Virus record (IMG/VR): IMGVR_UViG_3300046517_002304
Coordinates: 248,001 to 312,000 of that record
Length of the DNA: 64,000 bases
Reading direction: 5' to 3' (one strand)
Position numbers and translations under genes: made by a program. The notes beneath the pieces are model-generated. The model worked only from the letters and a program-made list of their open reading frames with translations. It made no database searches and was not told where the DNA came from. Below are positions 1 through 52,888 of this stretch, piece after piece; position 1 is the stretch's first letter; each line of letters begins with the position of its first letter.

Positions 1-115
1 CTTCTTTCCAATCCATAGTCCAATTACCGGCTATATGTTTGGAAAAAGCTTGCTTAAAATCATTGGCTAAATTAGATAATGATTGGCTATGCTCAACAAA
101 TAGTTTAAACTTCAT
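1..115 (-). CDS. Partial gene running off window edge (MKFKLFVEHSQ...), putative late/virion-internal protein
   Basis: ATG at 115, open to edge; TAAATA 4 nt upstream. Confidence 0.6.
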   Translation of the reverse strand, partial: MKFKLFVEHSQSLSNLANDFKQAFSKHIAGNWTMDWKE

Positions 116-129
116 ATACTATTTAGAAG

Positions 130-381
130 TTAATATCCGTAATCTTCGGAATAATCGCCGTCCATAGGATCAATTATAACGTCAGCATCATAGGCCCACT
201 TAGATAATAGCCTAGATACTTCTTCATAATTCCAGAAGCAGCTTACCATAATTGGACTTTCTTCCCCACAGCTCGGGCCAAATGATCTAATAATGCTTAT
301 AATTTCACTATCCCATTCACCGGAGGTCCATCTAATATGATAATCGTAAAGTCCAACTCCGCTGAAGTCAAATAGTTTCAT
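130..381 (-). CDS. Hypothetical protein
   Basis: 83-aa ORF. Confidence 0.55.
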   Translation of the reverse strand: MKLFDFSGVGLYDYHIRWTSGEWDSEIISIIRSFGPSCGEESPIMVSCFWNYEEVSRLLSKWAYDADVIIDPMDGDYSEDYGY

Positions 382-422
382 CTGGTAAATCTCTTATTAA
401 AAATCCACTAATATATATTAGT

Positions 423-1622
423 ATGCGATTTTCTCAATTCTTGACAGAAATTAGGACTCCTCCACATATGCCTCTGAAGTATTTCAGAGATAAGCTGGCC
501 AGCATTTCTGCTATAGAGCAAAATCTGAGTGAATTTGTTTTAAACTATGAAAAATTTCAAGATATTTTATATGATTTCAATGGTACTTCCAACTATTACA
601 GAATCCGCTTACCATGGGAAATTGGAGAAAAATTAGGCAAAAATACATCATATAAAGATTCATTTTCAGAGCCGATAAGAAGACTATTTCAATATTTAGA
701 GTTTGATAATCCTCACGGTTGGGAAAAATTTCTGCCAAACATTCTTCCGTTCGGAGAAGAAGGATATCAAGCTTTTATTACAAAGCATCAAAAGACATTG
801 AGGAAAATGACTCAATTTATAAAAGCTGCGCCTGATTTAGTTAATGAAATAAAAAGTGTTGCTGAATATTTGCAGGGTGGAAATCAAGCCGAGCCAGGAG
901 CGCCGACTTTAGCAGAGGCAGTAGGGTACGTGAATTACATTGCCAATGGATATCAAAATATAATGAAGTTGCTAAAAGAAGTTTTTGATCTTGAACATAA
1001 ATTAAAAGCGTATATGGAAAGAATACAACTTAATAAAGAGAGACAGTGGAACAGCACCGGAGAAGATATCAAGCCGAAACACGAAGGCACAGAAACATTA
1101 TATCATGCTACAATTGCCGCAGATGCTATTATAAACGGCGGATTTAAAACAAGAGCAGAATTAGGCCATAACGGAGCCTTAGGTGGTGGGCCGAGTGATG
1201 TAGTAAGTTTTACCGCCGACCTAAGAATAGCTAAAGAAATAAGCAAGAACCTAAGAATTGTAGTCAGAATAGCCAAAGGATTAATTAAACCAGAAGAAAT
1301 ACTAAAAATGGCCGCAGACGATAATGTTGACATTAGTAGATTTGACGCTCCCCGTAGTTATGCTCGCCATAAGACAGATGATCCAAAGATGACCTATGAG
1401 TTATTCAGAAGCTTTTTAGCACAGGCACATTTTGATAACAAGCATTATGACCCGTTATTCTTCGACGTATCTTTAGATGATTTGAAAAATGTAGATGAAC
1501 GACAAATTGGCGTACTAGCTTGTAAGGTTGATATGAGCCAAGTGAAAGATTATCTCACATCTATGGAAGAGTATAGAGCGCCGCCTAGTGCAGTTTTAGG
1601 TGTTAGAAAGGCTATAGGATAA
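423..1622 (+). CDS. Putative virion-internal protein with C-terminal ADP-ribosyltransferase-like domain
   Basis: N-terminal MRFSQFLTE; C-terminal LYHAT...VSFT...EEY pattern typical of ART folds. Confidence 0.55.
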   Translation: MRFSQFLTEIRTPPHMPLKYFRDKLASISAIEQNLSEFVLNYEKFQDILYDFNGTSNYYRIRLPWEIGEKLGKNTSYKDSFSEPIRRLFQYLEFDNPHGWEKFLPNILPFGEEGYQAFITKHQKTLRKMTQFIKAAPDLVNEIKSVAEYLQGGNQAEPGAPTLAEAVGYVNYIANGYQNIMKLLKEVFDLEHKLKAYMERIQLNKERQWNSTGEDIKPKHEGTETLYHATIAADAIINGGFKTRAELGHNGALGGGPSDVVSFTADLRIAKEISKNLRIVVRIAKGLIKPEEILKMAADDNVDISRFDAPRSYARHKTDDPKMTYELFRSFLAQAHFDNKHYDPLFFDVSLDDLKNVDERQIGVLACKVDMSQVKDYLTSMEEYRAPPSAVLGVRKAIG

Positions 1623-2311
1623 TGCCATTTAAAAATAAAAGACAAATCAAAGCATGCTTCGCAGCACATGACCCAAAATGGAATTGCGAAAAATGGCTTA
1701 AAGTAACACCTAAAAATATTCCAGAGTCATTGTCATTTAAACAATGGTTGGAAGGCAAACATTTAACAGAAGCTACTAAGGAAGATTTCTGGGAACTAGG
1801 CAATCTTCAAAGAGATAGACCAGAGCACGCCATGCTTCAAGTTCAATATGCTATGGGAGGCGGAGTTATGAATCCTGTCATAGAACATGTCGGCGATTTA
1901 ATTCACAGAATGACAGAGCGCCCTACTTGGAGCTATGCGGGATATGAGTATGTAAAAAATAAAGTAGAAAAAACTCTTAGGTGGCTTACAAATGGGTATG
2001 GGTTTGCCAAAGAATTCAGCGAAAATATAGCCAACAATGCTAGTTCAATGGGAATCCCAGCAGAACAACTACGTAGCAAAATATATCGCGCTATGGATGT
2101 ATATGCCGATGAGCATGCTAAATTACCTACTTATAATAGAGCGCAGAAGCTAGCGCAAATAGCAGCAGTATCTTTAGGTAGACGACAGTTTCATAAAACT
2201 GTCCAGGCACTTAAAATGCTACAATCACATCTTGGATCAATGCAAGAATGGATTAACTTTGCCCATCAAGGCGTCACTCAGAATGAACCAGTCGTAGCAC
2301 CATTGCCTTAG
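1622..2311 (+). CDS. Hypothetical protein (internal SFKQWLE motif)
   Basis: 229-aa ORF coupled to upstream stop (TAATG). Confidence 0.75.
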   Translation: MPFKNKRQIKACFAAHDPKWNCEKWLKVTPKNIPESLSFKQWLEGKHLTEATKEDFWELGNLQRDRPEHAMLQVQYAMGGGVMNPVIEHVGDLIHRMTERPTWSYAGYEYVKNKVEKTLRWLTNGYGFAKEFSENIANNASSMGIPAEQLRSKIYRAMDVYADEHAKLPTYNRAQKLAQIAAVSLGRRQFHKTVQALKMLQSHLGSMQEWINFAHQGVTQNEPVVAPLP

Positions 2312-2726
2312 GTGTGCGATATTCAAATAAACTGCCAACTCCCTTATATGGAGTGCCATTCCAATAATTAATTGCACATTCTTTGGCTTGATCAGGGTTA
2401 TCTATCCACTCATCAATTTCTGAATACCATCCCTCATCTGACGCCTCAACCCTACCAAGTGGCCTAACAAGGTATACAAAATCTAAATATCCGCCAGCAG
2501 AATCAATTTCGTCAATATCTGCTACCATATATACTGATTTTTTGCGGCTTAGCTTATCTTTTGGACGAACTAGCTCAAGAATATTTTCAGAGAACTGCAC
2601 TTCTGGATAACTAGTATATCCATCATTTTGTGGAGTTAAAATAAATCCATTAGGGAATTCCTTTCGGCTCCCATGATAAAGATTTTTAGGATTTAGATTC
2701 TCTAACCATAAACTGAAGGACTGCAT
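2274..2726 (-). CDS. Arr-like ADP-ribosyltransferase-fold protein
   Basis: LYHGS...SVYM...VYLVRPLG...EYR resembles Arr-type ARTs; N-terminal MQSFSLWLE; TAAATA upstream. Confidence 0.55.
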   Translation of the reverse strand: MQSFSLWLENLNPKNLYHGSRKEFPNGFILTPQNDGYTSYPEVQFSENILELVRPKDKLSRKKSVYMVADIDEIDSAGGYLDFVYLVRPLGRVEASDEGWYSEIDEWIDNPDQAKECAINYWNGTPYKGVGSLFEYRTPKAMVLRLVHSE

Positions 2727-2730
2727 TCAT

Positions 2731-2736
2731 TATTTA
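2731..2736 (-). promoter_or_regulatory. T4-like late promoter core TAAATA (also at 120-125 on -, 61335-61340 on +, TATATA at 412-417 on +)
   Basis: Same hexamer 4-5 nt before ATG of four genes with similar N-termini. Confidence 0.55.
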
Positions 2737-2994
2737 TGAGTCTGCTACCAAGTATCTGTCCACTTAGCAACCTTACCTGCTACCGCACCGATAATGATGC
2801 CTCCAACCATTACACCTAAGGCAACCACCATACATCCAAAAAAAACTAGTATTAAATCTAACATCGCTTTAACCTTTCAAAACCATTGTCCAGAAAAATA
2901 TTCCCCATCCGATAAACATAGCTAGTATAACCCATCCAGCAGGTAATACTTTATTCTTTTCTTCAGTCGTGTTTTTCATTTTTTATTTTCCTTG

Positions 2995-3303
2995 TTAATC
3001 ATTAAAACCAACTTGTTCTCTGTACTTAAAAATAAACTCACAAGCCTTGTCTATGCTGGTGCTTCCTACACCATTTGGCGCAGTTACACTTTCAGAATAC
3101 AGCACTTGTGCCGTACTGGCTCCATAAACTGTAATAAAAGAGCCATTAATGGTAAGGCTAACTCTCCCAGCTTCGGTAGAGCCGTCTTTTGTTTTAATTA
3201 CGTGAAGCGGCCAGAACGTTTCTGAATCTAGGTAAGCGACCTGATCGTAAGCATCTTTCCAGCATCTTTCCCCTGATACATTTATACTAACGCTAGCTTT
3301 CAT
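2995..3303 (-). CDS. MKAEVKI-family protein
   Basis: MKASVSINV...IFKYREQVGF. Confidence 0.8.
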   Translation of the reverse strand: MKASVSINVSGERCWKDAYDQVAYLDSETFWPLHVIKTKDGSTEAGRVSLTINGSFITVYGASTAQVLYSESVTAPNGVGSTSIDKACEFIFKYREQVGFND

Positions 3304-3305
3304 AA

Positions 3306-4139
3306 TTACTCGTCTTTCTTATCAGTACTCTTATACATTCGCTCGCCATTAATCCACCACTGCACATTTCCGCTGGCGAAAACAATAGCCGGGCCTTCTT
3401 CTCTATGCAGCTTACCTTCCCTAAACCAGAACATTTCTGCATCTGACGTAATAACAGCAGGGCCATTATCACGGTGCTGTATTCCATCTTTATACCAGTA
3501 TTGACTTCCGTCCGATGTTTGTATGGCAGGACCATTATTGCGATGTAGCTTCCCGTCTAAATACCATAATTGACTACCGTCTGGTGCCATTACAGCCGGC
3601 TTTCCTACTCGGTGATATTTTCCATTAACCCACCATTCTTTTCTTGATTTATATTCTTTTTCAGGCGTGGAACCATGAACCTCTTCAAAAATAATTCTTG
3701 CTGGACCATCTACTCTATGTCTCTCCCCTTCAGAAAACCATTCTTGGTCTCCATTATTACGAATAATGGCAGGCCCACCGTCTCTATGTAATCTTCCTTG
3801 TTTATACCAGCATTGATCGCCATTACTAAAAATCATCGCCGGACCATCTTCCCGATGGAGAAGACCATGTTGGAACCATTCGGCCGTATACCAATTATCT
3901 TGGTAAACGATTGCTGGACCAGAATCTCTATGATATGATCCATACTCGTCAAACCAACGTTCAGTGTTGCCATTTGAATCAGTCTTATACCGTGGAACAT
4001 TAGCGAAACCCCGAGCAACTCCATCAATCGCGGGGCGAGATACAAAATCTTCTCCACGTACAACTTTTGTCCAGATTAGGTATGACCCAAACCCCAGCAA
4101 AAGCAAAAACAACACACGCATTAAATTATTTTTACTCAT
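3306..4139 (-). CDS. Membrane-anchored HRxDGPA-repeat protein
   Basis: N-terminal hydrophobic segment; about 8 W..G..HR.DGPA repeats. Confidence 0.85.
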   Translation of the reverse strand: MSKNNLMRVLFLLLLGFGSYLIWTKVVRGEDFVSRPAIDGVARGFANVPRYKTDSNGNTERWFDEYGSYHRDSGPAIVYQDNWYTAEWFQHGLLHREDGPAMIFSNGDQCWYKQGRLHRDGGPAIIRNNGDQEWFSEGERHRVDGPARIIFEEVHGSTPEKEYKSRKEWWVNGKYHRVGKPAVMAPDGSQLWYLDGKLHRNNGPAIQTSDGSQYWYKDGIQHRDNGPAVITSDAEMFWFREGKLHREEGPAIVFASGNVQWWINGERMYKSTDKKDE

Positions 4140-4165
4140 TTTTTTCTCCTTGTTATTTTTTTCTT

Positions 4166-4396
4166 TCAGGTATTAATAAATTTTAAAACTTCAATAGCAA
4201 TCACGGCTACCCCAACGCCTATGAAGCACATTACTCCAAACATTAACATGACATATCTGGAGTTACTTCTATTTCCTGCCCGACACAGACCACAATCGTA
4301 TATCAATTCATGTCCGTCTATAATCATAGTTCGGCATGTTATATTATGCTTCTTACATTTATATCGGAAGATCAACGTCCTTACTTTAGCTTTCAT
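4166..4396 (-). CDS. MKA-start protein with Cys motifs and C-terminal TM helix
   Basis: CKKH...CGLC; hydrophobic tail. Confidence 0.7.
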   Translation of the reverse strand: MKAKVRTLIFRYKCKKHNITCRTMIIDGHELIYDCGLCRAGNRSNSRYVMLMFGVMCFIGVGVAVIAIEVLKFINT

Positions 4397-4706
4397 AATC
4401 GTCCTTGTATACTTTTCGGTAACGGTAAATAGTTGAGCGCATTTCCGTCAAAGTGTATTCCTTAAAAAACGCCGCACCAAAATCCTTCATCTTACCACTA
4501 CAAATTACACTTCCATCGTCTTTAAAAATAGTCAAAACACTGCTGGTCATTCCTCCTCCATTAGGCGGCACCACTCTACCGACTAATATAAGGTCTTTAT
4601 AAAAACGCTTTTCCAGCCTATTGTTAACCATATAAAAAGAAAGCGAATATTCGTATGTATTCTTTTTTTTCTCAGGCCCTACAGTAATTTTAACTTCAGC
4701 TTTCAT
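4386..4706 (-). CDS. MKAEVKI-family protein
   Basis: MKAEVKITVG. Confidence 0.85.
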   Translation of the reverse strand: MKAEVKITVGPEKKKNTYEYSLSFYMVNNRLEKRFYKDLILVGRVVPPNGGGMTSSVLTIFKDDGSVICSGKMKDFGAAFFKEYTLTEMRSTIYRYRKVYKDDYES

Positions 4707-4978
4707 TTGTTTAATCCATATGCGTTACGATAATAATATACTTCATGTCCAGCGATATCATTAGATTCATCAGACATTTCATACTTAAATGGACGATATG
4801 AGTATGACGCGCCAGAATTATCCTGATAAATATACAATCTTTTCTGGGAATAAACAACATACCCAACACAGTAATTGCCTGGAGTGTAAATGTATACAAT
4901 GCTATACAAATCACCGCTGGGTATAAAATGATATGGGTGTTCTTTAAAACGAATCTTATAATCAACAATGGCCTTCAT
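4703..4978 (-). CDS. MKAEVKI-family protein
   Basis: MKAIV...HPY...YYYRNAYGL. Confidence 0.8.
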   Translation of the reverse strand: MKAIVDYKIRFKEHPYHFIPSGDLYSIVYIYTPGNYCVGYVVYSQKRLYIYQDNSGASYSYRPFKYEMSDESNDIAGHEVYYYRNAYGLNK

Positions 4979-5253
4979 TCCATTCCCTTGCCAGTCCGAT
5001 ATTCATGTAACGCAATACCAAAGGCATCATCGCTAGAATACCATTTTTTAAAAACACCTTTGTTTACCGCAAATCCATCTCCTGTTTCGCCATAAACAAC
5101 AACTAAGCCGTCAAGATCAAACCTCACGCCTACTTTATGATTATTATCATCACGGTAAATCGTACAATATGGCATGCCACTACCATAACATACTTTTTTT
5201 ATCGCATATGGATGTTCGATATTTACTTCTTTTATAATTACTTCAGCCTTCAT
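4975..5253 (-). CDS. MKAEVKI-family protein
   Basis: MKAEVII...LHEYRTGKGME. Confidence 0.85.
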   Translation of the reverse strand: MKAEVIIKEVNIEHPYAIKKVCYGSGMPYCTIYRDDNNHKVGVRFDLDGLVVVYGETGDGFAVNKGVFKKWYSSDDAFGIALHEYRTGKGME

Positions 5254-5516
5254 ACATGCCCCAATTCTCTGAAACGAGTTTCATGAACATATTTCACTAT
5301 TTCATACAAAGCCTCATTAGGGTCAATAGTACGCAGTATATCACGATGATGATTTAAACAAGCATGAACGCGAACAGTGTTGTCAGACCAGTTAATCAAA
5401 CCTGCCAATCCACCATCCTGTAAAGATACTCTAATCATCTGATATGAAATATATTTCAGTCTATAGCCGAACATATCCGGCAACACTTCCAATTCAAATG
5501 AGTAAGGCTTAGTCAT
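5250..5516 (-). CDS. Hypothetical protein within array
   Basis: ATGA-coupled at both ends. Confidence 0.75.
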   Translation of the reverse strand: MTKPYSFELEVLPDMFGYRLKYISYQMIRVSLQDGGLAGLINWSDNTVRVHACLNHHRDILRTIDPNEALYEIVKYVHETRFRELGHV

Positions 5517-5779
5517 TCGTATCCCATCAACTTTCTTAGTTCGTGAATCCTAATGGCAATCTGATCGTCGGTTTCATTTTTACTAATACCAATATCACAA
5601 GTATTCTGAGAATTGTTATTAAAAACACTAGCCTCATCGCGCCTACGATTAATATACCCAACAAAAAATGTATTATCGCTATTCCTTAAGTCCGATCCAT
5701 AGAATGTCTTTTTAAGAGTATAAGGATGACTATTATTTTTTTCCTCAGACCCTAAAGTAATTTTAACTTCAGCTTTCAT
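5513..5779 (-). CDS. MKAEVKI-family protein
   Basis: MKAEVKITLG...IHELRKLMGYE. Confidence 0.85.
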   Translation of the reverse strand: MKAEVKITLGSEEKNNSHPYTLKKTFYGSDLRNSDNTFFVGYINRRRDEASVFNNNSQNTCDIGISKNETDDQIAIRIHELRKLMGYE

Positions 5780-6045
5780 TCCAACCCCTTTGATTTACGA
5801 TATTCGTGTAGAGCAATGCCGAAAGCATTATTACTATCATAATGTTTGTTAAAGCCTATTGCTTCAGAAGTTATATCATTATGATTGTAGAACATCACGC
5901 TACCGTCACCATGAAATCTAACGCCTATAGGGTTATCGTTGTTATCTTTCCAAACCGTATAATGATTACCGCCCAAAACATAAACTTTTTCTGTTTTGTA
6001 AATGATGTTATTTGCTAACTCTCTTACGGTAACTTCAGCTTTCAT
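5776..6045 (-). CDS. MKAEVKI-family protein
   Basis: MKAEVTV...LHEYRKSKGLE. Confidence 0.85.
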   Translation of the reverse strand: MKAEVTVRELANNIIYKTEKVYVLGGNHYTVWKDNNDNPIGVRFHGDGSVMFYNHNDITSEAIGFNKHYDSNNAFGIALHEYRKSKGLE

Positions 6046-6320
6046 TAGTTTCTCCCCAAATAATACTTGCGATAAAGATTTACCTTAAACAAACATGCTT
6101 CTGGCGTAATCCCATCAGGAAGATCAATAGTAGTTACACGCTTCTCCGCTACTTCATCATATATTGAAATTGTGCAATCGGTTAAATTAATAGCAGCAAC
6201 TCTTCCAAGGTTTTTGGCGAAAGGAATCAATAAATAAACAGCACCTTTGGTTGCAGTGGAGTTCCAGTGTATCCGATAAGGCGAATCTTCAACCATTGAT
6301 ATTTTGACTTCAGCTTTCAT
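6045..6320 (-). CDS. MKAEVKI-family protein
   Basis: Start moved to MKAEVKIS (ATGA overlap). Confidence 0.8.
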   Translation of the reverse strand: MKAEVKISMVEDSPYRIHWNSTATKGAVYLLIPFAKNLGRVAAINLTDCTISIYDEVAEKRVTTIDLPDGITPEACLFKVNLYRKYYLGRN

Positions 6321-6604
6321 TCCCATCCCTTTGATTTACGATATTCGTGTACTATCTGGCCAAATTCATCATCACTAGTGTATTGATTAATAGGTAGATT
6401 TAATTCACCATAGTCAAAAGTATTTCCATTTTTATTATAGACAGCAAAACTTTTAGCATTATCATTACTCTCCGCAAACCTAAGAGCGGCTTTATGATTA
6501 TTACCACAGATATAAAGCGTATAATATAACGAACCATTATCGTGGTGCGTTTTCTCAATCTTATATGGGTTACTACAAACAGATACCTTAACAGTTGCTT
6601 TCAT
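6317..6604 (-). CDS. MKAEVKI-family protein
   Basis: MKATVKV...VHEYRKSKGWE. Confidence 0.85.
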   Translation of the reverse strand: MKATVKVSVCSNPYKIEKTHHDNGSLYYTLYICGNNHKAALRFAESNDNAKSFAVYNKNGNTFDYGELNLPINQYTSDDEFGQIVHEYRKSKGWE

Positions 6605-6855
6605 TCGTACCCTTGTTCTTTTCTAAACTCATAAATCCTATGAGCTACTTCATCATTCGTCTCATTTACCAAAGTCATAAACTTAGAAGCAGTCTGACCG
6701 TGTAGATCAAACGCCACTATCGTATTTTGAGGACGATTTACATACCCAACAAAACCATTAGCATTACGAAAGTCCATTCCATATGCCGTAGAATGAAGCG
6801 TGTAAGGGTGCTTGTTAGACCTAGACCCTACAGTAATTTTAACACTAGCCTTCAT
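6601..6855 (-). CDS. MKAEVKI-family protein
   Basis: MKASVKI...IYEFRKEQGYE. Confidence 0.85.
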   Translation of the reverse strand: MKASVKITVGSRSNKHPYTLHSTAYGMDFRNANGFVGYVNRPQNTIVAFDLHGQTASKFMTLVNETNDEVAHRIYEFRKEQGYE

Positions 6856-7118
6856 TCGTATCCCTGTTCTTTCCTAATCTCATAAATCCTACAGGCTGCT
6901 TCGTTATTAGACTCGTAAAGAGAGAGAGGAAAACTAGCAAGAACAACACCATTATTATAAACAAATACAGTGTGATTTGAGCGATCTATCACACCAACCG
7001 TTTTCTCAAAACCATGCTGGTCTATTACAAATGTACTCTGAGTGCCTTCAGACATGCTATAAGGGTGGCTATTATTTTTTTTCTCAGGCCCCAAAGAGAT
7101 TTTAACAGTTGCTTTCAC
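6852..7118 (-). CDS. MKAEVKI-family protein (GTG start)
   Basis: GTGA overlap; (M)KATVKI...IYEIRKEQGYE. Confidence 0.8.
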   Translation of the reverse strand: MKATVKISLGPEKKNNSHPYSMSEGTQSTFVIDQHGFEKTVGVIDRSNHTVFVYNNGVVLASFPLSLYESNNEAACRIYEIRKEQGYE

Positions 7119-7387
7119 GTAGGCCACCCTTTACTTAAACGAAATTCATAGATTCTCTTAGCCACTTCTTCTAACATCTCCTCGTCTTTACCCGATTCTA
7201 CTGTAGTTAAGTGGTCTATACCATTAAAGGCTTTATTATAAATATTCATGTAAGAGTCACCAACATTCATCTTTCCAACAACTACATTCCCTGTAAAAGG
7301 TTTCTCCCAAAAAATATAATATCTACCATCCATAGTCCCAATCCAATAAGGATGCCCGCCAACAGTTATTTTAACTTCAGCTTTCAT
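7115..7387 (-). CDS. MKAEVKI-family protein
   Basis: MKAEVKITVGGHPY...IYEFRLSKGW. Confidence 0.85.
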   Translation of the reverse strand: MKAEVKITVGGHPYWIGTMDGRYYIFWEKPFTGNVVVGKMNVGDSYMNIYNKAFNGIDHLTTVESGKDEEMLEEVAKRIYEFRLSKGWPT

Positions 7388-7659
7388 GTTTCCCATCCAC
7401 TATACAAGCGAAATTCATAAATTCTCTTAGCAGCATTTTCTAAAGATTCCGGTGTAGCTTTTCCATCTATCCAGTCATGATGATGCACTCCGTTAAAACT
7501 CTTATTATAAACGGACACATACTTTTCATCCTTAGCCCATCTTCCTACAACCTTCGATGGATATACTCCTTTAAGCTTAACCATAATATAAGTATACCCA
7601 AATCCTTTAGAGAAATAGTAAGGATGCCCACCAACTGTAATTTTAACTTCTGCTTTCAT
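7384..7659 (-). CDS. MKAEVKI-family protein
   Basis: MKAEVKITVGGHPY...IYEFRLYSGW; close paralog of neighbour. Confidence 0.85.
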   Translation of the reverse strand: MKAEVKITVGGHPYYFSKGFGYTYIMVKLKGVYPSKVVGRWAKDEKYVSVYNKSFNGVHHHDWIDGKATPESLENAAKRIYEFRLYSGWET

Positions 7660-7898
7660 AGGTCGTGATTTTCCACATAACTGGCAATTACTGATGCTAC
7701 CTTTTTCAAATTTTTCGTCTCATAAACAGCATTAAATACCTGCATTCCCTTTTTATCAAATATTTCTAACGTACCGCTCTCGGTCAAAAACCTAGCAACC
7801 ATCGTATAATGGTCATAAAAATAATCCCATCCATAACAATGCATAATACGATAGTCCCCAATCATACTATAAACAATTATAGAAGATAATGCCTTCAT
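7656..7898 (-). CDS. MKA-start array protein
   Basis: MKALSS; coupled to downstream gene. Confidence 0.75.
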   Translation of the reverse strand: MKALSSIIVYSMIGDYRIMHCYGWDYFYDHYTMVARFLTESGTLEIFDKKGMQVFNAVYETKNLKKVASVIASYVENHDL

Positions 7899-7926
7899 AG
7901 GAATCCCTTAATATCCTTTAGAAAAA

Positions 7927-8217
7927 TCATTCCGTCCCAAAAAACTGTTTTCGGGAAGACCAAATTTGTTCGGCAACCTGATCCCTGGTCATATTCTCAT
8001 GACAACTAAAAGTAAATAAAGGACTACATTTATTATCATAAACAACAAATTTCTTACATGATTTAGACTTACTGTCATAGCTCATTGCGCCTACATCACG
8101 AAGTAATTTATAACTATAAACCCTATAATTAAAATCCCAGTCAAGCGCCGTCATGTGAATGCTATATGGATGATCACCTTCTGGTTTATTCACAGATAAT
8201 TTTACTTCAGCTTTCAC
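7927..8217 (-). CDS. MKAEVKI-family protein (GTG start)
   Basis: KAEVKLSV...HPY. Confidence 0.8.
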   Translation of the reverse strand: MKAEVKLSVNKPEGDHPYSIHMTALDWDFNYRVYSYKLLRDVGAMSYDSKSKSCKKFVVYDNKCSPLFTFSCHENMTRDQVAEQIWSSRKQFFGTE

Positions 8218-8477
8218 GCATCACCATTTATTCTTTGTAGTTCTGCGGCTAAGTCATTAGCGTCCCAATATTTTTGACTATAAGTACCAACAATTATTTG
8301 CAATCCTGATAAAGATACATCGTACCGTTCAAGGATATAGACACCAAGATTATTATCTCTAATCCTTCCCTTCTTCTCGCTAAAACCAGAGAAAACATTA
8401 TAATAACCATTGCCAATGTATACCGCATAATACAAAGGCTGGTGATTAATCTTCCAATCTGATAATATTGCTTTCAT
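8214..8477 (-). CDS. MKA-start array protein
   Basis: MKAILS; coupled. Confidence 0.75.
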   Translation of the reverse strand: MKAILSDWKINHQPLYYAVYIGNGYYNVFSGFSEKKGRIRDNNLGVYILERYDVSLSGLQIIVGTYSQKYWDANDLAAELQRINGDA

Positions 8478-8782
8478 ATATGTCCTAATTCCATCATTCT
8501 TTTAGCAAGAATAAATGTAAAAGACTCATACTCATTTGGCAAATATTCCCCTTCCCAAATTGTATTAACTTGATCATCAAACACTCTCATTACATTACTA
8601 TTTCCATCACAGGCACCAATGCTATAATAAGCGCCTTCTTCAGTAATCCTAGCAAATGAATAAAACTTCTTATTAAGATGTTTATACATTATAAAAGGAT
8701 GATATTTTGACGAACTGATAACATCGTATTCAATATATTTTGGAAATTTAAATACAACATCAATACTAACATTGGCTTTCAT
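8474..8782 (-). CDS. MKAEVKI-family protein
   Basis: MKANVSI. Confidence 0.75.
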   Translation of the reverse strand: MKANVSIDVVFKFPKYIEYDVISSSKYHPFIMYKHLNKKFYSFARITEEGAYYSIGACDGNSNVMRVFDDQVNTIWEGEYLPNEYESFTFILAKRMMELGHI

Positions 8783-9059
8783 GTTTACACCCAAATGCCT
8801 TACGTTTTTTGTAAATATGCTCTTCTATTTCTTCTTTACTCATAGCCTTATAATCACTTATAGATAACGTTTTAGATCCAACTCCTTTATTGGCATATAC
8901 TCTTAAGTCACGGATATATCCTGTACTGTTTGGCTTTTGATAACCACATACCAATTCGTTAGTGCTCTCAAGATAAGCGGCTATTCTTCCTAAAGTTGGA
9001 CTATCCCTAAAGACATAACCGTATCGGCTACCAAGACTAAGTTTAACTTCTGCCTTCAT
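8766..9059 (-). CDS. MKAEVKI-family protein
   Basis: MKAEVKLSLG. Confidence 0.8.
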   Translation of the reverse strand: MKAEVKLSLGSRYGYVFRDSPTLGRIAAYLESTNELVCGYQKPNSTGYIRDLRVYANKGVGSKTLSISDYKAMSKEEIEEHIYKKRKAFGCKHESQC

Positions 9060-9340
9060 TGTTTTAACCAATCTCTCTTTAATAATTCATTATGAACATA
9101 GTGAATTAAATGATCATGATTCGCAAATTTAGGAATTCCGTTGATTACTATATACTGCATATTATTAGGATCAGTTGAGCCATATAAACAGATTTGTTCC
9201 GAACCACATAAATGAACTGCTACTAGATTACCCATTACCCAAGGAGGTTGACCTACGTGAACATGTGTCTCTAAAGGAAGCACATCCTGAGCACAATAAT
9301 CAAATATCTTGTTTACTTCTATTTTAACTTCGGCTTTCAT
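9056..9340 (-). CDS. MKAEVKI-family protein
   Basis: MKAEVKIEV. Confidence 0.85.
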   Translation of the reverse strand: MKAEVKIEVNKIFDYCAQDVLPLETHVHVGQPPWVMGNLVAVHLCGSEQICLYGSTDPNNMQYIVINGIPKFANHDHLIHYVHNELLKRDWLKQ

Positions 9341-9597
9341 GGTTTCTCCAATCCAACCGAGATTCTGTATTCATGTAGCTTAGCTCCTACTGCTTCTAAA
9401 TCATCACCTTTTATACTAAGATAAATCGGAAGGCTATTATCTGATTGAATAACAGCCAACATTTTCTTATTCACGTAATACTTGCCAACTATTGCCATAC
9501 CATCTTGAGATATAAACCATTTCTCGTTATTTTTAAGATGATAAATTACATATGGATTATCATTGTTAACAATGGATATTTTAACCGAAGCTTTCAT
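9337..9597 (-). CDS. MKAEVKI-family protein
   Basis: MKASVKIS...LHEYRISVGLE. Confidence 0.85.
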   Translation of the reverse strand: MKASVKISIVNNDNPYVIYHLKNNEKWFISQDGMAIVGKYYVNKKMLAVIQSDNSLPIYLSIKGDDLEAVGAKLHEYRISVGLEKP

Positions 9598-9843
9598 TCT
9601 AATCCCTTTTTCATACGAAACTCATAAATGAACTCAGCTATTTCATCTAAATCACTCATATGAGGAGACAAATACACCGTCTCCCCCATTCCAACGTCAA
9701 CCTGTAGTGAGTTGTTTTCTTTTTTATACATGGCAACAACATGATGTCCACCAGGTTTGCAGAAATAAGTTCCGCCATCATATTGATAATACCAATATCG
9801 CGGTTCTTTTTTTTTCAAGAAAAACTTTTACTTCAGCTTTCAT
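9594..9843 (-). pseudogene. MKAEVKI-family gene frameshifted in an A9 run
   Basis: ATG 9843 MKAEVKVFLE; removing one A of the run at 9807-9815 restores the frame to IYEFRMKKGLE. Confidence 0.75.
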
Positions 9844-10091
9844 TAATCTTCCCACCCTTGATTAAACCTGTACGAATACACCCATCTAGCAACTTCATTT
9901 ACGTCTTTTGACTTAGTAGGAACAAAGAACGTGGACCCATTTGATCGGTAGATCTCTATTCTTTTTTTATTCGTGTCAAACTTTGCCGCTAAGTTGTTGT
10001 TATTTTTATTAGTGAACCAATACAACTGTGGGAAATCAGTAATATTATACGGAGGCTTGTTATTAACAGTGATTTTTACGGTTGCTTTCAT
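9843..10091 (-). CDS. MKAEVKI-family protein
   Basis: MKATVKIT...YSYRFNQGWE. Confidence 0.85.
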   Translation of the reverse strand: MKATVKITVNNKPPYNITDFPQLYWFTNKNNNNLAAKFDTNKKRIEIYRSNGSTFFVPTKSKDVNEVARWVYSYRFNQGWED

Positions 10092-10336
10092 AATTCCCAT
10101 CCTTGCACTGTTCTATAACTGTGTAGCCAAATCCCCGCTTCATCTACGTTAGTATTCGACCACCCGACAGTAATATTCTTTCCATTTGGAGGGAATATCA
10201 ATAGTCTACTGCCTAAAAACAATTTACCGTATATAGAAGATCCATCAGGTGGCGCGAACCAAACTTGGCCTTCTGCAACATAATGTGCCATATACGGATG
10301 TTTTTTATTAATAAAAATTTTGATTTCAGCTTTCAT
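10088..10336 (-). CDS. MKAEVKI-family protein
   Basis: MKAEIKI...LHSYRTVQGWE. Confidence 0.85.
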   Translation of the reverse strand: MKAEIKIFINKKHPYMAHYVAEGQVWFAPPDGSSIYGKLFLGSRLLIFPPNGKNITVGWSNTNVDEAGIWLHSYRTVQGWEL

Positions 10337-10581
10337 TAACCTTCCCACCCTTGCGCTACGCGATAGTTGTATAGGTAGTTTCCTATTTCATCTATGTCTA
10401 CGCTTGATGTACCAATGGTAATTTCATTTCCAACAGGCGAAAACATTACCATTTTGACTCCGAGCAAGAATTTACCGAATACGACATCGCCGTTAGTAAA
10501 CCAAACTTGTTTATCAGAGTAATGGTACTTCTTATAAGGATGCTTGTTATTAATAACGGTGATTTCTACAGATGCCTTCAT
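10336..10581 (-). CDS. MKAEVKI-family protein
   Basis: MKASVEI...YNYRVAQGWE. Confidence 0.85.
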   Translation of the reverse strand: MKASVEITVINNKHPYKKYHYSDKQVWFTNGDVVFGKFLLGVKMVMFSPVGNEITIGTSSVDIDEIGNYLYNYRVAQGWEG

Positions 10582-10829
10582 GGTTGCTCCCATCCCTGCT
10601 CTACTCTGTAGCGATGAATCAAATTTCCTGCATATTCTACGTCCGTACACATAGTAGAAACAATGATGCCTCCTCCTTTTGGAGGACATATCACTATTTT
10701 ACTGCCCCAAAAGAGCTTGCCGAATACCTTGTTTCCGTTCGGTGACGTAAACCAGGTTTGGAATTCGGAATATTGAAGTAAACCGTACGGATGTTTTTTA
10801 CCAATTGTTATTTTTACTTCAGCTTTCAT
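10578..10829 (-). CDS. MKAEVKI-family protein
   Basis: MKAEVKITIG...HRYRVEQGWE. Confidence 0.85.
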   Translation of the reverse strand: MKAEVKITIGKKHPYGLLQYSEFQTWFTSPNGNKVFGKLFWGSKIVICPPKGGGIIVSTMCTDVEYAGNLIHRYRVEQGWEQP

Positions 10830-11074
10830 TCCAATCCTTTTTTCAGCCGGATGAAATAAATCGCTCTGCCAACGTCATCTATTGTATCTTGCGTTTTAGT
10901 CTTAAATATCGCTACGGCCTTACTTTCTCCAAAGCAAGCATGCGCAACTGAAATTCTGGCGAAATATTTGCCGACTAATTTATTTTCATTATTTCTAAAC
11001 TCTATTCTGCGAGGTCCATCATAAGCCCATTTATATGGATGTTTTAGAACAGAGATAATTACGGACGCTTTCAT
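10826..11074 (-). CDS. MKAEVKI-family protein (first gene of operon)
   Basis: MKASVII...IRLKKGLE. Confidence 0.85.
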   Translation of the reverse strand: MKASVIISVLKHPYKWAYDGPRRIEFRNNENKLVGKYFARISVAHACFGESKAVAIFKTKTQDTIDDVGRAIYFIRLKKGLE

Positions 11075-11083
11075 GATTTCACC

Positions 11084-11112
11084 ACAATACCATAAAACCC
11101 CTGTAGAGTCAA
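11084..11112 (-). promoter_or_regulatory. Sigma70-type promoter for the MKAEVKI array
   Basis: TTGACT-17 nt-TATTGT, ending 9 nt before ATG 11074. Confidence 0.7.
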
Positions 11113-11425
11113 TAGGATTTTTTCCTGGTATTTTTGGGAAAACCCCTTGTGGCGATAAAGGGTATTTCCTGGATTTTTTTGAAATGGCCGAATGCGGAAA
11201 ATGTCCCTGAATGTTTATTAAAATGGCAGGGTGCCGGATGAATATGGAACCTTTAAATACCCCTTATGTTTCTAAAGGGGCGGGGTACCGGGAAAATAAA
11301 AGATGAGGGGAATGAGGATGGCTGTCCTGGTGGCGTAGCCCCCCATCTTACTCAGACCCCCCACATGTTCCGGAAGATAATTTATAGCAGCAAGGTTCTG
11401 CTACCAGTTATCCCTAGAGCATGTC

Positions 11426-12801: not shown

Positions 12802-12949
12802 GGATAACTGCTCCCCGGCTAGTTATCCATATCTTAGGTACAGGGGAAACTATAAGAGTTAATAATTATAGTATCAGTACTTTAGCTATGGATAACTTAG
12901 AGGATCTCCGGGTAACGAAAACAGGGGGGACTTTCCCCCCTAGTTATCC
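12802..12949. repeat. Long intergenic element copy 1 (octamer pair + 77-bp IR-bounded unit + terminator)
   Basis: AGTTATCCATATCTTAGGTAC...TATGGATAACT then G6/C6 hairpin with A-tract. Confidence 0.8.
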
Positions 12950-15355: not shown

Positions 15356-15510
15356 GGATAACTGCGGGGTGGGCTAGTTATCCATATCTTAGGTACGGGG
15401 AGAGTTTTGTTGTACTAGGATTTAACTAGTAGGTACCTAAGATATGGATAACTCTGGCGGTACGTGGCGAAAAGAAAAAACGCTCCCGTTTCGGGGAGCG
15501 TTAGTTATCC
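15356..15510. repeat. Long intergenic element copy 2 (perfect 21-bp IR, 15376-15396 / 15433-15453)
   Basis: AGTTATCCATATCTTAGGTAC and exact reverse complement; terminator at 15475-15502. Confidence 0.85.
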
Positions 15511-17860: not shown

Positions 17861-18003
17861 GGATAACTCATCGCCGCCTAGTTATCCATATCTTAGGTAC
17901 GCAGAGAGTTTTGTTGTACTAGGATTTAACTAGTAGGTACTCTAGCTATGGATAACTAGACCTATCAGCTAGGCCAAAAAAATTGGCCCGGGTTTTCCGG
18001 GCC
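17861..18003. repeat. Long intergenic element copy 3
   Basis: 78-bp unit 17880-17957 near-identical to 15376-15453; terminator hairpin follows. Confidence 0.85.
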
Positions 18004-22227: not shown

Positions 22228-22368
22228 GGATAACTCATCGCCGCCTAGTTATCCATATCTTAGGTACGTAGCAGATATTGTTGTACTAGGATTTTCTAAT
22301 GTTGTACTCTAGTTATGGATAACTGGCCAGGACTACAGGCCAAAAAATTAGCCCCCGTTTAGCCGGGG
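22228..22368. repeat. Long intergenic element copy 4
   Basis: First ~40 bp identical to copy 3; 78-bp unit 22247-22324; terminator. Confidence 0.85.
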
Positions 22369-23872: not shown

Positions 23873-23976
23873 GGATAACTAGCTGGCCTCATAGTTATCC
23901 ATATCTTAGGTACAGAGCAATTTTTAATTCTTATAATGAAATAAAAAAACGCCAGCGGGTGATTCCCGCCAGCGTT
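23873..23976. repeat. Long intergenic element copy 5 (single arm) plus terminator
   Basis: GGATAACT-12 nt-AGTTATCCATATCTTAGGTAC. Confidence 0.75.
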
Positions 23977-27590: not shown

Positions 27591-27639
27591 ACTTGTTATC
27601 CTTTAAAAGTGTGCGGAGTTGATGGAAGTTAAAGGATAA

Positions 27640-34510: not shown

Positions 34511-34828
34511 CTATCTCAACAAATTTTGCGGGAGGTCCAGCTCAAACTCAACAGGACAAACCCACAAAAGCCGATCATTAAGAGTATTCTGACCTAGCGG
34601 CATCCTGTCAAACGTATACATAAATATAAACAATTCGTGCGGGATATCCCCTCGCCAGACCTTTTTGCCCCACAGAGATTTTTGAGAAATAGTAAAACGC
34701 TCACGAAAGACTTCGGCACGAAACTTGGGATTAAGAACCGCGTTGATTGCAGCAGCACCAGGGCAGGCCGCACAATTTCCCTGCATTCCATTTTTGATAT
34801 GCTCTTCTGTGATTTTAACTAATGTCAT
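34511..34828 (-). CDS. CPxAxAI/FD/F.LD.P family protein
   Basis: ITEEHIKNG...CAACP. Confidence 0.75.
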   Translation of the reverse strand: MTLVKITEEHIKNGMQGNCAACPGAAAINAVLNPKFRAEVFRERFTISQKSLWGKKVWRGDIPHELFIFMYTFDRMPLGQNTLNDRLLWVCPVEFELDLPQNLLR

Positions 34829-35831: not shown

Positions 35832-35832
35832 A

Positions 35833-50816: not shown

Positions 50817-50862
50817 AGCGATCTTTCTGTAAGTGAGGTTCAAGATGATTGTTAAAGGATAA

Positions 50863-52863: not shown

Positions 52864-52888
52864 AAACATCCTACCATCACTGCCGAGA

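What the first reader, a model, noticed from the sequence alone, without database searches (positions are those of the whole stretch)
2995..11112. 8-kb operon of ~26 hypervariable paralogs with conserved junctions (MKAEVKI array)
Seen: 26 genes of about 80-105 aa begin MKA, mostly MKA(E/S/T)V(K)I, often followed by HPY. Many end (I/L)(Y/H)E(Y/F)R..G(W/L/Y)E, with very divergent beta-rich, Tyr-rich middles. Nearly all are coupled by ATGA/GTGA/TAATG overlaps, and the C-terminal G-W-E codons supply a purine-rich SD-like stretch. At DNA level the conserved unit is the junction (~GGNTGGGAATGAAAGCTGAAGTTAAAATT), giving a repeat/variable-spacer architecture with coding spacers. Neighbours are often most alike (7115/7384; 10088/10336/10578). 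One sigma70-type promoter (11084-11112) precedes the array. Inference: a gene accordion encoding a diversified binder library on one scaffold, e.g. anti-defence or host-takeover proteins. The N-terminal strand might mediate co-assembly.
Basis: partly seen in the sequence, partly recalled or inferred. Interest (0 to 1): 0.85.

Follow-up and report, generated by a model that had tools for sequence, protein, structure and literature searches.

The report
Orphan 26-gene paralog array, soil megaphage
A 511-kb soil phage carries 26 back-to-back, translationally coupled genes for one family of small proteins found nowhere else, with a newly predicted fold, a conserved loose N-terminal tail and highly variable surfaces; its function is unknown, and a panel of binding proteins is the best guess.

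Summary
On the minus strand, 11074 to 2995, lie 27 co-directional small ORFs. Twenty-six are homologous over their full length, not only at the junctions. Most junctions are 4-nt ATGA/GTGA overlaps.

The N-terminal MKAxVKIxV is conserved at the amino-acid level, because its wobble bases vary. The terminal Gly codon of GxE is always GGA or GGG, so it also serves as a Shine-Dalgarno-like element.

AlphaFold (pLDDT 88) predicts five antiparallel strands plus a C-terminal helix, with a free N-terminal tail. PDB and BFVD hold no structural neighbour. A profile search of 1.84 billion representative proteins found only this genome's own copies. No Pfam, PHROG, NCBIfam or PADLOC model matched.

The copies are old. 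The closest pairs are about 50% identical, synonymous sites are saturated, and assemblies from several samples show no copy-number or sequence variation. This is a stabilised lineage-specific multigene family, not an active accordion.

The array sits in an AT-rich compartment that lacks the TAGTTATCC motif found before nearly every other gene in the window. Function is inferred only. The best guess is a co-expressed panel of variable-surface binders that share one docking tail, acting in host interaction or counter-defence. Co-assembly is the main rival.

The parts
4386..11074 (-). Contiguous run of 25 family genes, g01-g25 (74-106 aa each). Gene starts are at 11074, 10829, 10581, 10336, 10091, 9843 (frameshifted head) / 9818, 9597, 9340, 9059, 8782, 8477, 8217, 7898, 7659, 7387, 7118, 6855, 6604, 6320, 6045, 5779, 5516, 5253, 4978 and 4706.
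   Evidence: ORF list and junction table; alignment A1/A2; HMM hits; all-vs-all BLASTP and leave-one-out HMM
2995..3303 (-). g27, the 26th family member (102 aa), separated from the main run by g26 and the repeat-protein gene
   Evidence: Leave-one-out HMM E=4e-8; HMM hit
9807..9815 (-). A9 homopolymer that shifts g06 out of frame. The head ORF from the ATG at 9843 ends after 21 codons. A8 would restore a normal MKAEVKVFLEKKEPRYW... member.
   Evidence: The run is identical in independent assemblies. Its closest DNA match is the head of g04 (87% over 53 nt).
4166..4396 (-). g26, a 76-aa ORF starting MKAKV with a C-terminal hydrophobic segment. It is coupled to g25 by an 11-nt overlap and is not a detectable family member.
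3306..4139 (-). 277-aa protein with an N-terminal membrane anchor and MORN_2/YwqK/DUF6745-like beta-hairpin repeats, inserted between g26 and g27
   Evidence: Sub-threshold Pfam DUF6745 hit; Atlas structural neighbours at TM 0.65-0.74 to MORN_2/YwqK and DUF6745 clusters; internal 69-nt DNA repeats (D9/D12)
2727..2994 (-). Two tiny hydrophobic ORFs (36 and 39 aa) downstream of g27
   Evidence: Gene calls in L001/L002; sequence read directly
2274..2726 (-). 150-aa DUF2441-like protein with weak ADP-ribosyltransferase-fold neighbours. It is the last co-directional gene before the convergent genes.
   Evidence: Atlas: feature score 0.91-0.95 to DUF2441-type clusters; structural TM 0.48 to Arr and 0.44 to ART-PolyVal. 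A lead only.
11084..11112 (-). Candidate sigma-70-like promoter (TTGACT, 17-nt spacer, TATTGT, with an upstream TG). It is the only such site in the 350-nt non-coding stretch upstream of g01.
   Evidence: 9 of 12 positions; site counts in the region are not above chance. The -10 element ends 10 nt before the ATG.
11384..11413 (-). Inverted copy of the genome's gene-proximal 8-mer (GGATAACT) followed by a terminator-like hairpin. It marks the end of the motif-rich compartment just upstream of the array.

Best explanation
**What it is.** The array is an old, selectively maintained, lineage-specific multigene family of a 511-kb soil/rhizosphere phage. It holds 26 paralogs of one small soluble domain.

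**The domain.** Each protein has five antiparallel beta-strands packed against a C-terminal helix, preceded by a conserved but unstructured N-terminal tail, MKAxVKIxV.

**How it is expressed.** All copies are likely produced together from one long polycistronic mRNA by termination-reinitiation coupling. The stop overlaps the next start in ATGA. The purine-rich codons of the terminal Gly-x-Glu act as the Shine-Dalgarno element for the next cistron.

**What varies.** The core-facing strand residues, the turn glycines, the helix and both termini are conserved. The outward-facing strand positions and the loops are close to maximally variable.

**Most likely function.** It is a co-expressed panel of binders with different target specificities. 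All share one common 'handle', the N-terminal tail, possibly together with the conserved His-Pro-Tyr, Arg and terminal Glu. The handle would dock to one common partner. The panel most plausibly acts on host factors or defence proteins (host interaction or counter-defence).

**Shown:** gene structure, homology, coupling signals, conservation pattern, predicted fold, orphan status, age of the duplicates, and the distinct compositional and regulatory compartment.

**Inferred:** the single transcript, the binding function, the common partner and the host-directed role.
For: - **Family and gene structure:**
- **Coupling:** 20 ATGA/GTGA overlaps and 3 TAATG overlaps. The terminal Gly codon is GGA or GGG in 15 of 15 cases against 52% overall, and lies 8-14 nt before the next ATG.
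- **No internal signals:** there is no internal copy of the genome's gene-proximal motif, and terminator-like sites are not above chance.
- **Selection on the tail peptide:** wobble positions vary, for example GCT/GCA/GCC/GCG, GTT/GTA and ATA/ATT/ATC.
- **Tail is the most conserved segment:** mean column entropy is 1.39 bits, against 2.5-3.2 for the strands and the helix.
- **Tail is unstructured in the monomer:** mean pLDDT of residues 1-10 is 54, against 88-95 for residues 11-80.
- **Variable outer face:** strand positions alternate between conserved putative inward residues (2.13 bits) and variable putative outward residues (3.32 bits). Tyr is 7.5%, against 4.8% in the neighbouring AT-rich genes.
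- **Purifying selection:** all but one ORF are intact although synonymous sites are saturated. A random 88-codon frame of this base composition would stay open about 8 times in 10,000.
- **Fast-evolving, lineage-restricted family:** a profile search of 1.84e9 representative proteins returned only this genome's own copies, and pattern scans of the viral, metagenome and genome collections gave only chance singletons.
- **Distinct compartment:** GC3 is 0.30 against 0.52. There are no TAGTTATCC motifs in the array against 114 on the same strand in the rest of the window. This points to a different expression regime.
- **Precedents:** clusters of diverse phage counter-defence proteins that share only a short N-terminal targeting peptide are known (T4 internal proteins, PMC3012670). 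So are large expansions of small proteins in jumbo phages (phage G, about 35 zinc ribbons, PMC7824862).
Against: - No experimental or comparative evidence bears on function. The phage lineage is a singleton in every collection searched, so no ortholog comparison or presence/absence correlation is possible.
- No RNA run was listed, so the single transcript and its timing are unverified.
- dN/dS is uninformative because dS is saturated, so positive selection on the variable face is not shown.
- The proteins are not acidic (pI 5-10), so they are not DNA mimics.
- The strong conservation of both termini would equally fit self-assembly or co-assembly.
- Inward and outward strand faces were assigned from the alternation pattern, not from coordinates.
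- The phage has other paralog families, so duplication may partly reflect a genome-wide tendency.
Confidence: 0.4

Rival explanations
1. Co-assembling subunits. The conserved amphipathic N-terminal strand (A3, V5, I7, V9) of one paralog would complete or extend the beta-sheet of another. Equimolar, co-translated paralogs would then build one hetero-oligomeric ring, filament or lattice, either a structural element or a scaffold in the cell or the virion. The variable faces would tune the assembly or decorate it.
For: - The tail is the best-conserved segment, yet it is not part of the monomer fold.
- The sheet is a beta-meander with two free edge strands.
- Tight translational coupling favours fixed stoichiometry.
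- The C-terminal helix and the terminal GxE are also conserved in all members.
Against: - A 26-component obligate assembly would be unprecedented.
- Structural proteins are usually conserved across related phages, whereas this family has no relatives at all.
- Extreme divergence of the exposed strand positions (3.3 bits) is not expected for mutually fitting interfaces.
- One member is frameshifted in every assembly, apparently without being lost.
Confidence: 0.2
2. Capsid-packaged, ejected proteins in the manner of the T4 internal proteins. The shared N-terminal peptide would be a targeting signal that loads all paralogs into the prohead. They would be injected with the DNA and neutralise different host nucleases or sensors immediately on entry.
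For: - The architecture is formally parallel: a cluster of proteins sharing a roughly 10-residue N-terminal peptide, as described for the T4 capsid-targeting sequence (PMC3012670).
- Small size and no signal peptide.
- A very large capsid has room for cargo (inference).
Against: - There is no conserved prohead-protease-type (L/I)-x-E site at the end of the tail. E4 is present in only 12 of 26 members.
- In T4 the protein bodies are unrelated to each other, whereas here they are homologous.
- The array lacks the motif that precedes the other genes, so there is nothing to place it among the late genes.
- No virion data exist.
Confidence: 0.12
3. A lineage-specific expansion of small nucleic-acid-binding regulators, comparable to the roughly 35 zinc-ribbon copies of Bacillus phage G. 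Each member would recognise a different DNA or RNA site or a different transcript class.
For: - About half of the members are basic, with pI 8.4-9.9.
- Arg75, Lys2 and Lys6 are conserved.
- A precedent exists in a jumbo phage (PMC7824862).
- The genome has an unusually elaborate per-gene motif system.
Against: - There is no match to any known nucleic-acid-binding fold.
- The other half of the members are neutral or acidic.
- No metal-binding or helix-turn-helix signature is present.
Confidence: 0.1
4. An array of immunity or antidote proteins for a toxin encoded nearby, for example the DUF2441/ART-like gene at 2274-2726, by analogy with the immunity-gene arrays of polymorphic toxin loci.
For: - Tandem arrays of small paralogous immunity genes are typical of such loci (general knowledge).
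- A protein with weak ADP-ribosyltransferase-fold neighbours lies at the end of the same co-directional gene string.
- One low-ranking, non-significant Foldseek hit was to a toxin-immunity complex (E=1.1).
Against: - No recognised toxin, trafficking or immunity domain is present.
- The ART-like assignment is a lead only (TM 0.44-0.48).
- The array precedes the candidate gene rather than following it, and is separated from it by four other genes.
- Coupled co-expression of all 26 members is unlike silent orphan immunity cassettes.
Confidence: 0.05
5. The shared ends are only translation-coupling signals on otherwise unrelated or decaying ORFs, so there is no common fold or function.
For: The terminal Gly codon is under nucleotide-level constraint, and AAA as the second codon is a common expression-friendly choice (general knowledge).
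Against: - 13 of the 27 middles score E<=1e-5 against a profile of the other members once both ends are removed.
- Full-length BLASTP E-values go down to 1e-28.
- The family alignment yields a confident single fold (pLDDT 88).
- Wobble bases in the tail codons vary while the amino acids are kept.
- 25 of 26 ORFs are intact despite saturated dS.
Confidence: 0.02

Closest known systems
Lineage-specific expansions of small proteins in jumbo phages (e.g. about 35 zinc-ribbon copies in Bacillus phage G; PMC7824862) and the multigene families of large DNA viruses (ASFV MGFs, poxvirus ANK/PRANC; from general knowledge)
   Same: - Dozens of paralogs of one small domain, restricted to one viral lineage.
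- A conserved scaffold with divergent surfaces.
- In the poxvirus ANK/PRANC case, a variable binding part joined to a short conserved terminal 'handle'.
   Different: - The protein family and predicted fold have no detectable relatives.
- All copies sit in one uninterrupted head-to-tail string.
- Almost every junction is a 4-nt start/stop overlap.
- The conserved handle is a nine-residue N-terminal tail.
T4-type internal-protein (IP) locus with its capsid-targeting sequence (PMC3012670)
   Same: A cluster of small phage proteins that all begin with the same roughly 10-residue peptide while the rest differs. In T4 they are injected counter-defence proteins.
   Different: - Here the protein bodies are homologous to one another.
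- There is no conserved protease cleavage motif after the tail.
- There are 26 members rather than a handful.
- Virion association is unknown.
Gene accordions: recent tandem amplification under selection (T4 tifA amplification against ToxIN, PMC9391042; poxvirus K3L as cited in that paper)
   Same: Tandem head-to-tail copies of a small phage gene. Short conserved junction sequences could seed unequal recombination; T4 needs only 6-10 bp of microhomology.
   Different: Accordion copies are near-identical, recent and polymorphic in number. Here the closest copies are about 50% identical, synonymous sites are saturated, and no copy-number variation is seen among samples.
Staphylococcal superantigen-like (SSL) gene cluster (general knowledge, not tested here)
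   Same: A tandem cluster of more than 10 paralogs on one fold, each binding a different host target.
   Different: SSLs are bacterial and secreted, their genes are individually expressed, and their fold is known (OB plus beta-grasp).

Membership tests
Tandem lineage-specific multigene family of a large virus | Three or more adjacent, co-oriented genes that are homologous over their full length | tested here: met
   26 members by HMM. Full-length BLASTP E-values down to 1e-28. Leave-one-out HMM is significant for all but g11, g22 and g26.
Tandem lineage-specific multigene family of a large virus | Restricted to one lineage | tested here: met
   hmmsearch against 1.84e9 representatives found only this genome's own proteins, plus three marginal repetitive proteins that hhalign did not support. 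Collection scans gave only chance singletons.
Tandem lineage-specific multigene family of a large virus | The host genome is a virus | tested here: inconclusive
   IMG/VR lists the 511,233-bp contig as a UViG. The window has tRNAs, a UvrD-like helicase closest to phage helicases, and a ParB-like PHROG hit. No capsid or terminase gene lies in the window.
Gene accordion (recent adaptive tandem amplification) | Near-identical copies | tested here: not met
   Maximum about 50% amino-acid identity; pS 0.59-0.80 for the closest pairs.
Gene accordion (recent adaptive tandem amplification) | Copy-number polymorphism within or between populations | tested here: inconclusive
   Eleven loci and contigs of four runs are 99.97-100% identical with the same gene count. 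Only assembled contigs were available, not raw reads.
T4-type internal proteins with capsid-targeting sequence | A shared N-terminal peptide of about 10 residues on clustered genes | tested here: met
   MKAxVKIxV in 24-25 members; mean entropy 1.39 bits.
T4-type internal proteins with capsid-targeting sequence | Prohead-protease cleavage motif ((L/I)-x-E) ending the targeting peptide | tested here: not met
   No conserved Glu after a (L/I)-x pair in residues 1-14. E4 occurs in 12 of 26 members and follows K-A.
T4-type internal proteins with capsid-targeting sequence | Presence in the virion and ejection into the host | not testable with these tools
   Needs virion proteomics.
Known anti-defence or defence protein families | Sequence or fold match to a characterised family | tested here: not met
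   No hit in Pfam, PHROGs, NCBIfam or PADLOC, by PDB sequence, by Foldseek against PDB and BFVD, or in the ESM Atlas.
Polymorphic-toxin immunity array | An adjacent gene with a recognised toxin or trafficking domain | tested here: inconclusive
   The only lead is a DUF2441-like 150-aa protein with weak ART-fold neighbours. No Pfam or NCBIfam hit.
DNA-level repeat/spacer array (CRISPR-like or other non-coding repeat) | Repeat conservation independent of the reading frame | tested here: not met
   Information content drops at every third codon position of the conserved junction. The repeats are the coding ends of the paralogs.

The most novel reading that the evidence does not exclude
The 26 paralogs would be a new class of phage 'handle plus variable body' system on a previously unseen fold. 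One conserved N-terminal donor strand would plug every member into one common machine or into each other. The hypervariable sheet faces would capture 26 different host targets. The array would then be a hard-wired, co-translated counter-defence or host-takeover repertoire of a megaphage, expressed from a compartment with its own transcription regime.
Probability: 0.2. Interest if true: 0.85.

Novelty: new variant of a known kind. Interest (0 to 1): 0.6.

Why it matters
Huge phages carry hundreds of unexplained small genes. Here about 8 kb of a 511-kb genome is spent on 26 maintained copies of one orphan domain, which implies strong selection for diversity on one scaffold.

If the members are target-specific binders with a common docking tail, the array would be a natural, compact binder library. 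It would also be a direct entry point to the host factors or defence systems that soil megaphages must neutralise, and it would add a new small fold.

The near-perfect chain of 4-nt overlaps across 25 genes is also a clean natural model for long-range translational coupling.

The contrast with the rest of the window, where one TAGTTATCC motif precedes nearly every gene, gives a handle on the transcription programme of an uncultured megaphage.

Tried and rejected
- **Close or distant relatives in phage records.** Megablast of the array and of a 20-kb stretch, and tblastn of one member, against 50,697 phage records found nothing.
- **Protein searches.** The word-index search and the exhaustive profile search found only this genome's own proteins, plus one 1-residue variant from another sample.
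- **Three long repetitive proteins** scored E=2e-5 to 6e-4. The two checked with hhalign matched only over a 28-residue beta-hairpin-like stretch (probability 16-30%), and all three were dismissed.
- **Back-translated N-terminal pattern scans** of the viral, metagenome and genome collections gave only this genome or single chance matches without arrays.
- **Structure comparison.** The second, of g05, was good (pLDDT 88). Neither has a significant Foldseek neighbour. Weak polo-box and PH-like hits (E of at least 0.15, TM 0.42-0.55) reflect only a general sheet-plus-C-terminal-helix topology. The ESM Atlas gave no lead.
- **dN/dS** was computed but is uninformative because dS is saturated.
- **Population variation** was absent in all loci and contigs.
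- **RNA evidence.** No RNA run was listed.
- **Structured leader upstream of g01.** The fold z-score was -0.76, so there is none. Rfam found only three tRNAs.
- **DNA-mimic idea.** Rejected because pI is 5-10.
- **Diversity-generating retroelement idea.** Not pursued. The array has no near-identical template/variable repeat pair; the best DNA repeats are 41-53 nt at 87-90% identity, at the gene heads.
- **Literature search** for the 8-mer motif returned only unrelated primer sequences.

Full report
**1. What is there**

The minus strand between 11074 and 2995 carries a chain of 27 co-directional small ORFs of 74-106 aa. I numbered them g01 (11074-10826) to g27 (3303-2995).

- 24 begin MKA as annotated.
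- g06 has an MKAEVKV head starting at 9843 (a TAATG overlap with g05). A run of nine A at 9815-9807 puts this head out of frame. It stops after 21 codons, while the family frame continues from a TTG at 9818. Eight A would restore a normal member.
- g22 starts MTKPY.
- g26 (4396-4166) starts MKAKV, but its second half is a hydrophobic segment, and it is not a detectable family member.
- Between g26 and g27 lies a 277-aa gene (4139-3306) for a membrane-anchored protein with MORN_2/YwqK/DUF6745-like repeats.

A profile of the family finds exactly 26 members, g01-g25 and g27, and none elsewhere in the window or in the flanks I could fetch.

The junctions are 20 ATGA/GTGA 4-nt overlaps and 3 TAATG overlaps. 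There is also one 17-nt overlap, one 11-nt overlap and one 28-nt gap.

**2. A real protein family, not only conserved junctions**

- All-against-all BLASTP gives full-length hits for 19 of the 27 ORFs, with E-values down to 1e-28.
- In leave-one-out tests every ORF except g11, g22 and g26 scores E<=6e-6 against a profile of the others. After cutting off the first 9 and last 16 residues, 13 of the middles still score E<=1e-5.
- The alignment shows these conserved positions: M1-K2-A3, V5, K6, I7, V9, (H13)-P14-Y15, F/Y26, G31, V35-G36, V/I47-Y/F48, G52, D65-E66, I71-(Y/H)72-x-Y74-R75, G79-x-E81. Almost everything else is near maximal entropy.

**3. What kind of conservation it is**

In the N-terminal codons the first and second positions are conserved and the third positions vary: Ala is GCT/GCA/GCC/GCG, Val is GTT/GTA/GTC, Ile is ATA/ATT/ATC. 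Information content falls to 0.2-0.5 bits at wobble sites. Selection is therefore on the peptide, not on a DNA repeat.

The junction repeats that the repeat finder reports are simply the coding ends of the paralogs. They comprise 14 copies of 41 nt at 61-100% identity, with exact stretches of about 16-24 nt.

At the C-terminus there is also nucleotide-level constraint. The Gly of the terminal G-x-E uses GGA or GGG in 15 of 15 cases, against 52% of all Gly codons in the array. It lies 8-14 nt before the next ATG.

**4. Fold**

With the family as the alignment, AlphaFold2 models g05 at pLDDT 87.9 and pTM 0.74.

- Five antiparallel strands: 15-20, 23-28, 34-39, 44-48 and 54-58.
- A C-terminal helix at 64-78.
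- Residues 1-10 have low confidence (mean pLDDT 54).

The more divergent g01 gives the same secondary-structure topology at pLDDT 74, with one strand reduced to a two-residue bridge.

The N-terminal tail is the best-conserved segment of the family (mean entropy 1.39 bits, against 2.5-3.2 for the strands and the helix), yet it is not part of the monomer fold. Within the strands, conserved hydrophobic positions alternate with hypervariable ones (2.13 against 3.32 bits). This suggests a conserved helix-facing core and a variable open sheet face. That reading comes from the alternation pattern, because coordinates were not inspected.

Tyr makes up 7.5% of residues, against 4.8% in neighbouring genes of similar AT content. 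pI ranges from 5.0 to 9.9, so the proteins are not acidic DNA mimics.

**5. Relatives**

None were found.

- No Pfam, PHROG, NCBIfam or PADLOC model matches.
- There is no PDB sequence match.
- Foldseek finds nothing significant in the PDB (best E=0.15-0.5) or in BFVD (best E=0.024 at TM 0.44). The weak polo-box/PH-like hits share only a sheet-plus-terminal-helix topology.
- The ESM Atlas gave nothing.
- An exhaustive profile search of 1.84 billion representative proteins returned 23 short proteins, all encoded by this genome. It also returned three long repetitive proteins at E=2e-5 to 6e-4. hhalign of two of these showed only a 28-residue hairpin-like similarity.
- Pattern scans for the back-translated MKAEVKI(T/S)V in the viral, metagenome and genome collections found this genome or isolated chance matches without arrays.

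**6. The genome**

- The proteins occur on contigs of 511,233 and 511,254 bp from two JGI samples. The array is internal in one and at the contig end in the other, which suggests a circular or circularly permuted genome.
- IMG/VR lists the contig as a viral genome.
- The runs that hold it are soil and rhizosphere metagenomes.
- The window has three tRNAs, a split UvrD-like helicase closest (about 36% identity) to phage helicases, and a ParB-like protein.
- Nothing in the 50,697 phage records is close.

**7. Age and dynamics**

- The tree of the paralogs is star-like, with a median terminal branch of 1.18 changes per site. The few supported clades are g14+g15, g20+g23 (with g18), g02-g04 and g09+g12.
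- For the closest pairs pS is 0.59-0.80, so synonymous sites are saturated and dN/dS cannot be interpreted.
- Eleven loci from other samples, and contigs of four runs, are 99.97-100% identical to the window, with the same gene count and the same A9 run. Contigs break inside the array only where depth is 3-6.
- This is therefore an old, stabilised family under purifying selection. From the base composition, a random 88-codon frame would stay open about 8 times in 10,000, yet 25 of 26 are intact.
- It is not an accordion caught in action. The adjacency of the most similar copies still shows that it grew by local tandem and small segmental duplication. The exact junction stretches are longer than the 6-10 bp microhomologies that suffice for amplification in T4 (PMC9391042).

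**8. Context**

The 8-mer AGTTATCC occurs 133 times in the window, against 1.7 expected. 114 of these are on the minus strand, and the extended consensus is T-AGTTATCC-N-T-(T/A)-A. They lie just upstream of nearly every gene from 11.4 to 63.6 kb. In 34 cases the ATG is exactly 10 nt after the 8-mer. One copy lies about 17 nt upstream of tRNA-Arg, which argues for a promoter rather than a translation signal.

Within 1-11,400 there is a single copy, and there is none in the array.

The motif-free region is also AT-rich. GC3 is 0.30 in the array, against 0.52 in the motif-associated genes. This region continues at least 4.7 kb beyond the window start. Independent assemblers give the same boundary, so it is not a chimera.

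The array therefore belongs to a separate compositional and regulatory compartment. It must be transcribed differently from the bulk of the window.

It is a 9-of-12 match in a region with no excess of such sites, and its -10 element ends 10 nt before the ATG. I cannot confirm it. An inverted motif copy and a terminator-like hairpin at 11413-11384 precede the spacer. The spacer RNA is not unusually structured.

Downstream of g27 come two tiny hydrophobic ORFs and a 150-aa DUF2441-like protein with weak ADP-ribosyltransferase-fold neighbours. Convergent genes follow.

**9. Interpretation**

*Shown:* one family, one predicted fold, tight coupling signals, peptide-level conservation of a free N-terminal tail and of the C-terminal helix and GxE end, hypervariable exposed positions, orphan status, old age, and a separate compartment.

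*Inferred:* a single polycistronic transcript. Termination-reinitiation would then yield all paralogs together, in roughly fixed proportions.

The pattern 'most conserved element lies outside the fold, most variable elements lie on the exposed sheet face' is what one expects of proteins that share one docking interaction but differ in what else they bind. I therefore favour a co-expressed panel of target-specific binders with a common handle, most plausibly directed at host factors or defence proteins (confidence 0.4).

Two known systems work this way:
- The T4 internal proteins are diverse injected anti-restriction proteins that share only the capsid-targeting peptide (PMC3012670).
- The poxvirus ANK/PRANC family combines a variable binding part with a conserved terminal handle (general knowledge).

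The phage G zinc-ribbon expansion shows that jumbo phages can fix dozens of copies of a small domain (PMC7824862).

The main rival is co-assembly through strand donation by the tail (0.2). I could not test it because no multimer prediction was available. A T4-like packaging signal (0.12), nucleic-acid-binding regulators (0.1) and an immunity array (0.05) remain possible. The idea that only the junctions are conserved is contradicted by the data (0.02).

**10. Verdict**

The phenomenon, a lineage-specific tandem expansion in a giant phage, is known. This instance is unusual in four ways:
- its size, 26 copies;
- an almost unbroken chain of 4-nt overlaps;
- a fold and family without any relative;
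- a conserved free N-terminal tail.

I rate it a new variant of a known kind, with interest 0.6.

Noticed in passing
window 11406-63573, mostly minus strand: The 8-mer AGTTATCC (extended T-AGTTATCC-N-T-T/A-A) occurs 133 times against 1.7 expected. It lies just upstream of nearly every gene and about 17 nt upstream of tRNA-Arg (tRNA at 24689-24615). In 34 cases the ATG follows exactly 10 nt after the 8-mer, which suggests near-leaderless transcripts. It is probably a phage-specific promoter. It is absent from the array, and only one copy lies in 1-11400.
   Followed up: partly
window 12802-12841, 15356-15396, 17861-17900, 22228-22267, 23873-23913: Palindromic pairs GGATAACT-N(10-12)-AGTTATCC are followed by the 21-nt element AGTTATCCATATCTTAGGTAC. 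The element occurs at least 6 times in this genome and in no other IMG/VR contig. They may be divergent promoters or hairpin signals.
   Followed up: partly
window 1-11400 and at least 4.7 kb beyond the window start (L001:5533-10283): An AT-rich compartment (GC 0.34-0.40; GC3 0.30 against 0.52) lacks the motif. Several of its genes have a TATA-like stretch directly abutting the ATG (e.g. ...AAATAGTATATG, ...ATATATTAGTATG). This suggests a second promoter class or leaderless starts.
   Followed up: partly
window 9807-9815 (minus): An A9 run frameshifts family member g06 and is identical in all assemblies. It could mark a pseudogene, or a site of transcriptional slippage or phase variation.
   Followed up: partly
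window 34511-34828, 35535-35867, 36821-37213, 38741-39034 (minus): A second, dispersed four-member paralog family of about 100 aa, 26-31% identical, with invariant C..CP.A..I and FD...P.F motifs. Each copy has its own upstream motif.
   Followed up: partly
window 26802-27590 and 27640-28605 (minus): A UvrD-like superfamily-1 helicase is split into two ORFs in different frames, with an AGTTATCC motif (27634-27641) between them. It may be expressed as two separately promoted halves.
   Followed up: no
window 2274-2726 (minus) and 423-1622 (plus): The 150-aa protein is DUF2441-like, with weak structural neighbours among ADP-ribosyltransferases (Arr, ART-PolyVal). Both proteins contain an LYH(G/A)(S/T) motif, but they are not significantly similar to each other.
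   Followed up: partly
window 3306-4139 (minus): A membrane-anchored protein with MORN_2/YwqK/DUF6745-like beta-hairpin repeats (about 69-nt DNA periodicity) is embedded in the array. Structural neighbours are mostly phage and giant-virus proteins.
   Followed up: partly
window 49797-50843 (minus): A 348-aa protein with a prepilin-type N-terminal methylation motif (Pfam N_methyl, just at threshold), that is, a pilin-like protein in a phage genome.
   Followed up: no
window 52889-54025 (minus): A ParB-like protein (PHROG E=2e-11). The opposite strand carries an almost equally long ORF (52838-54007), probably a shadow ORF.
   Followed up: no
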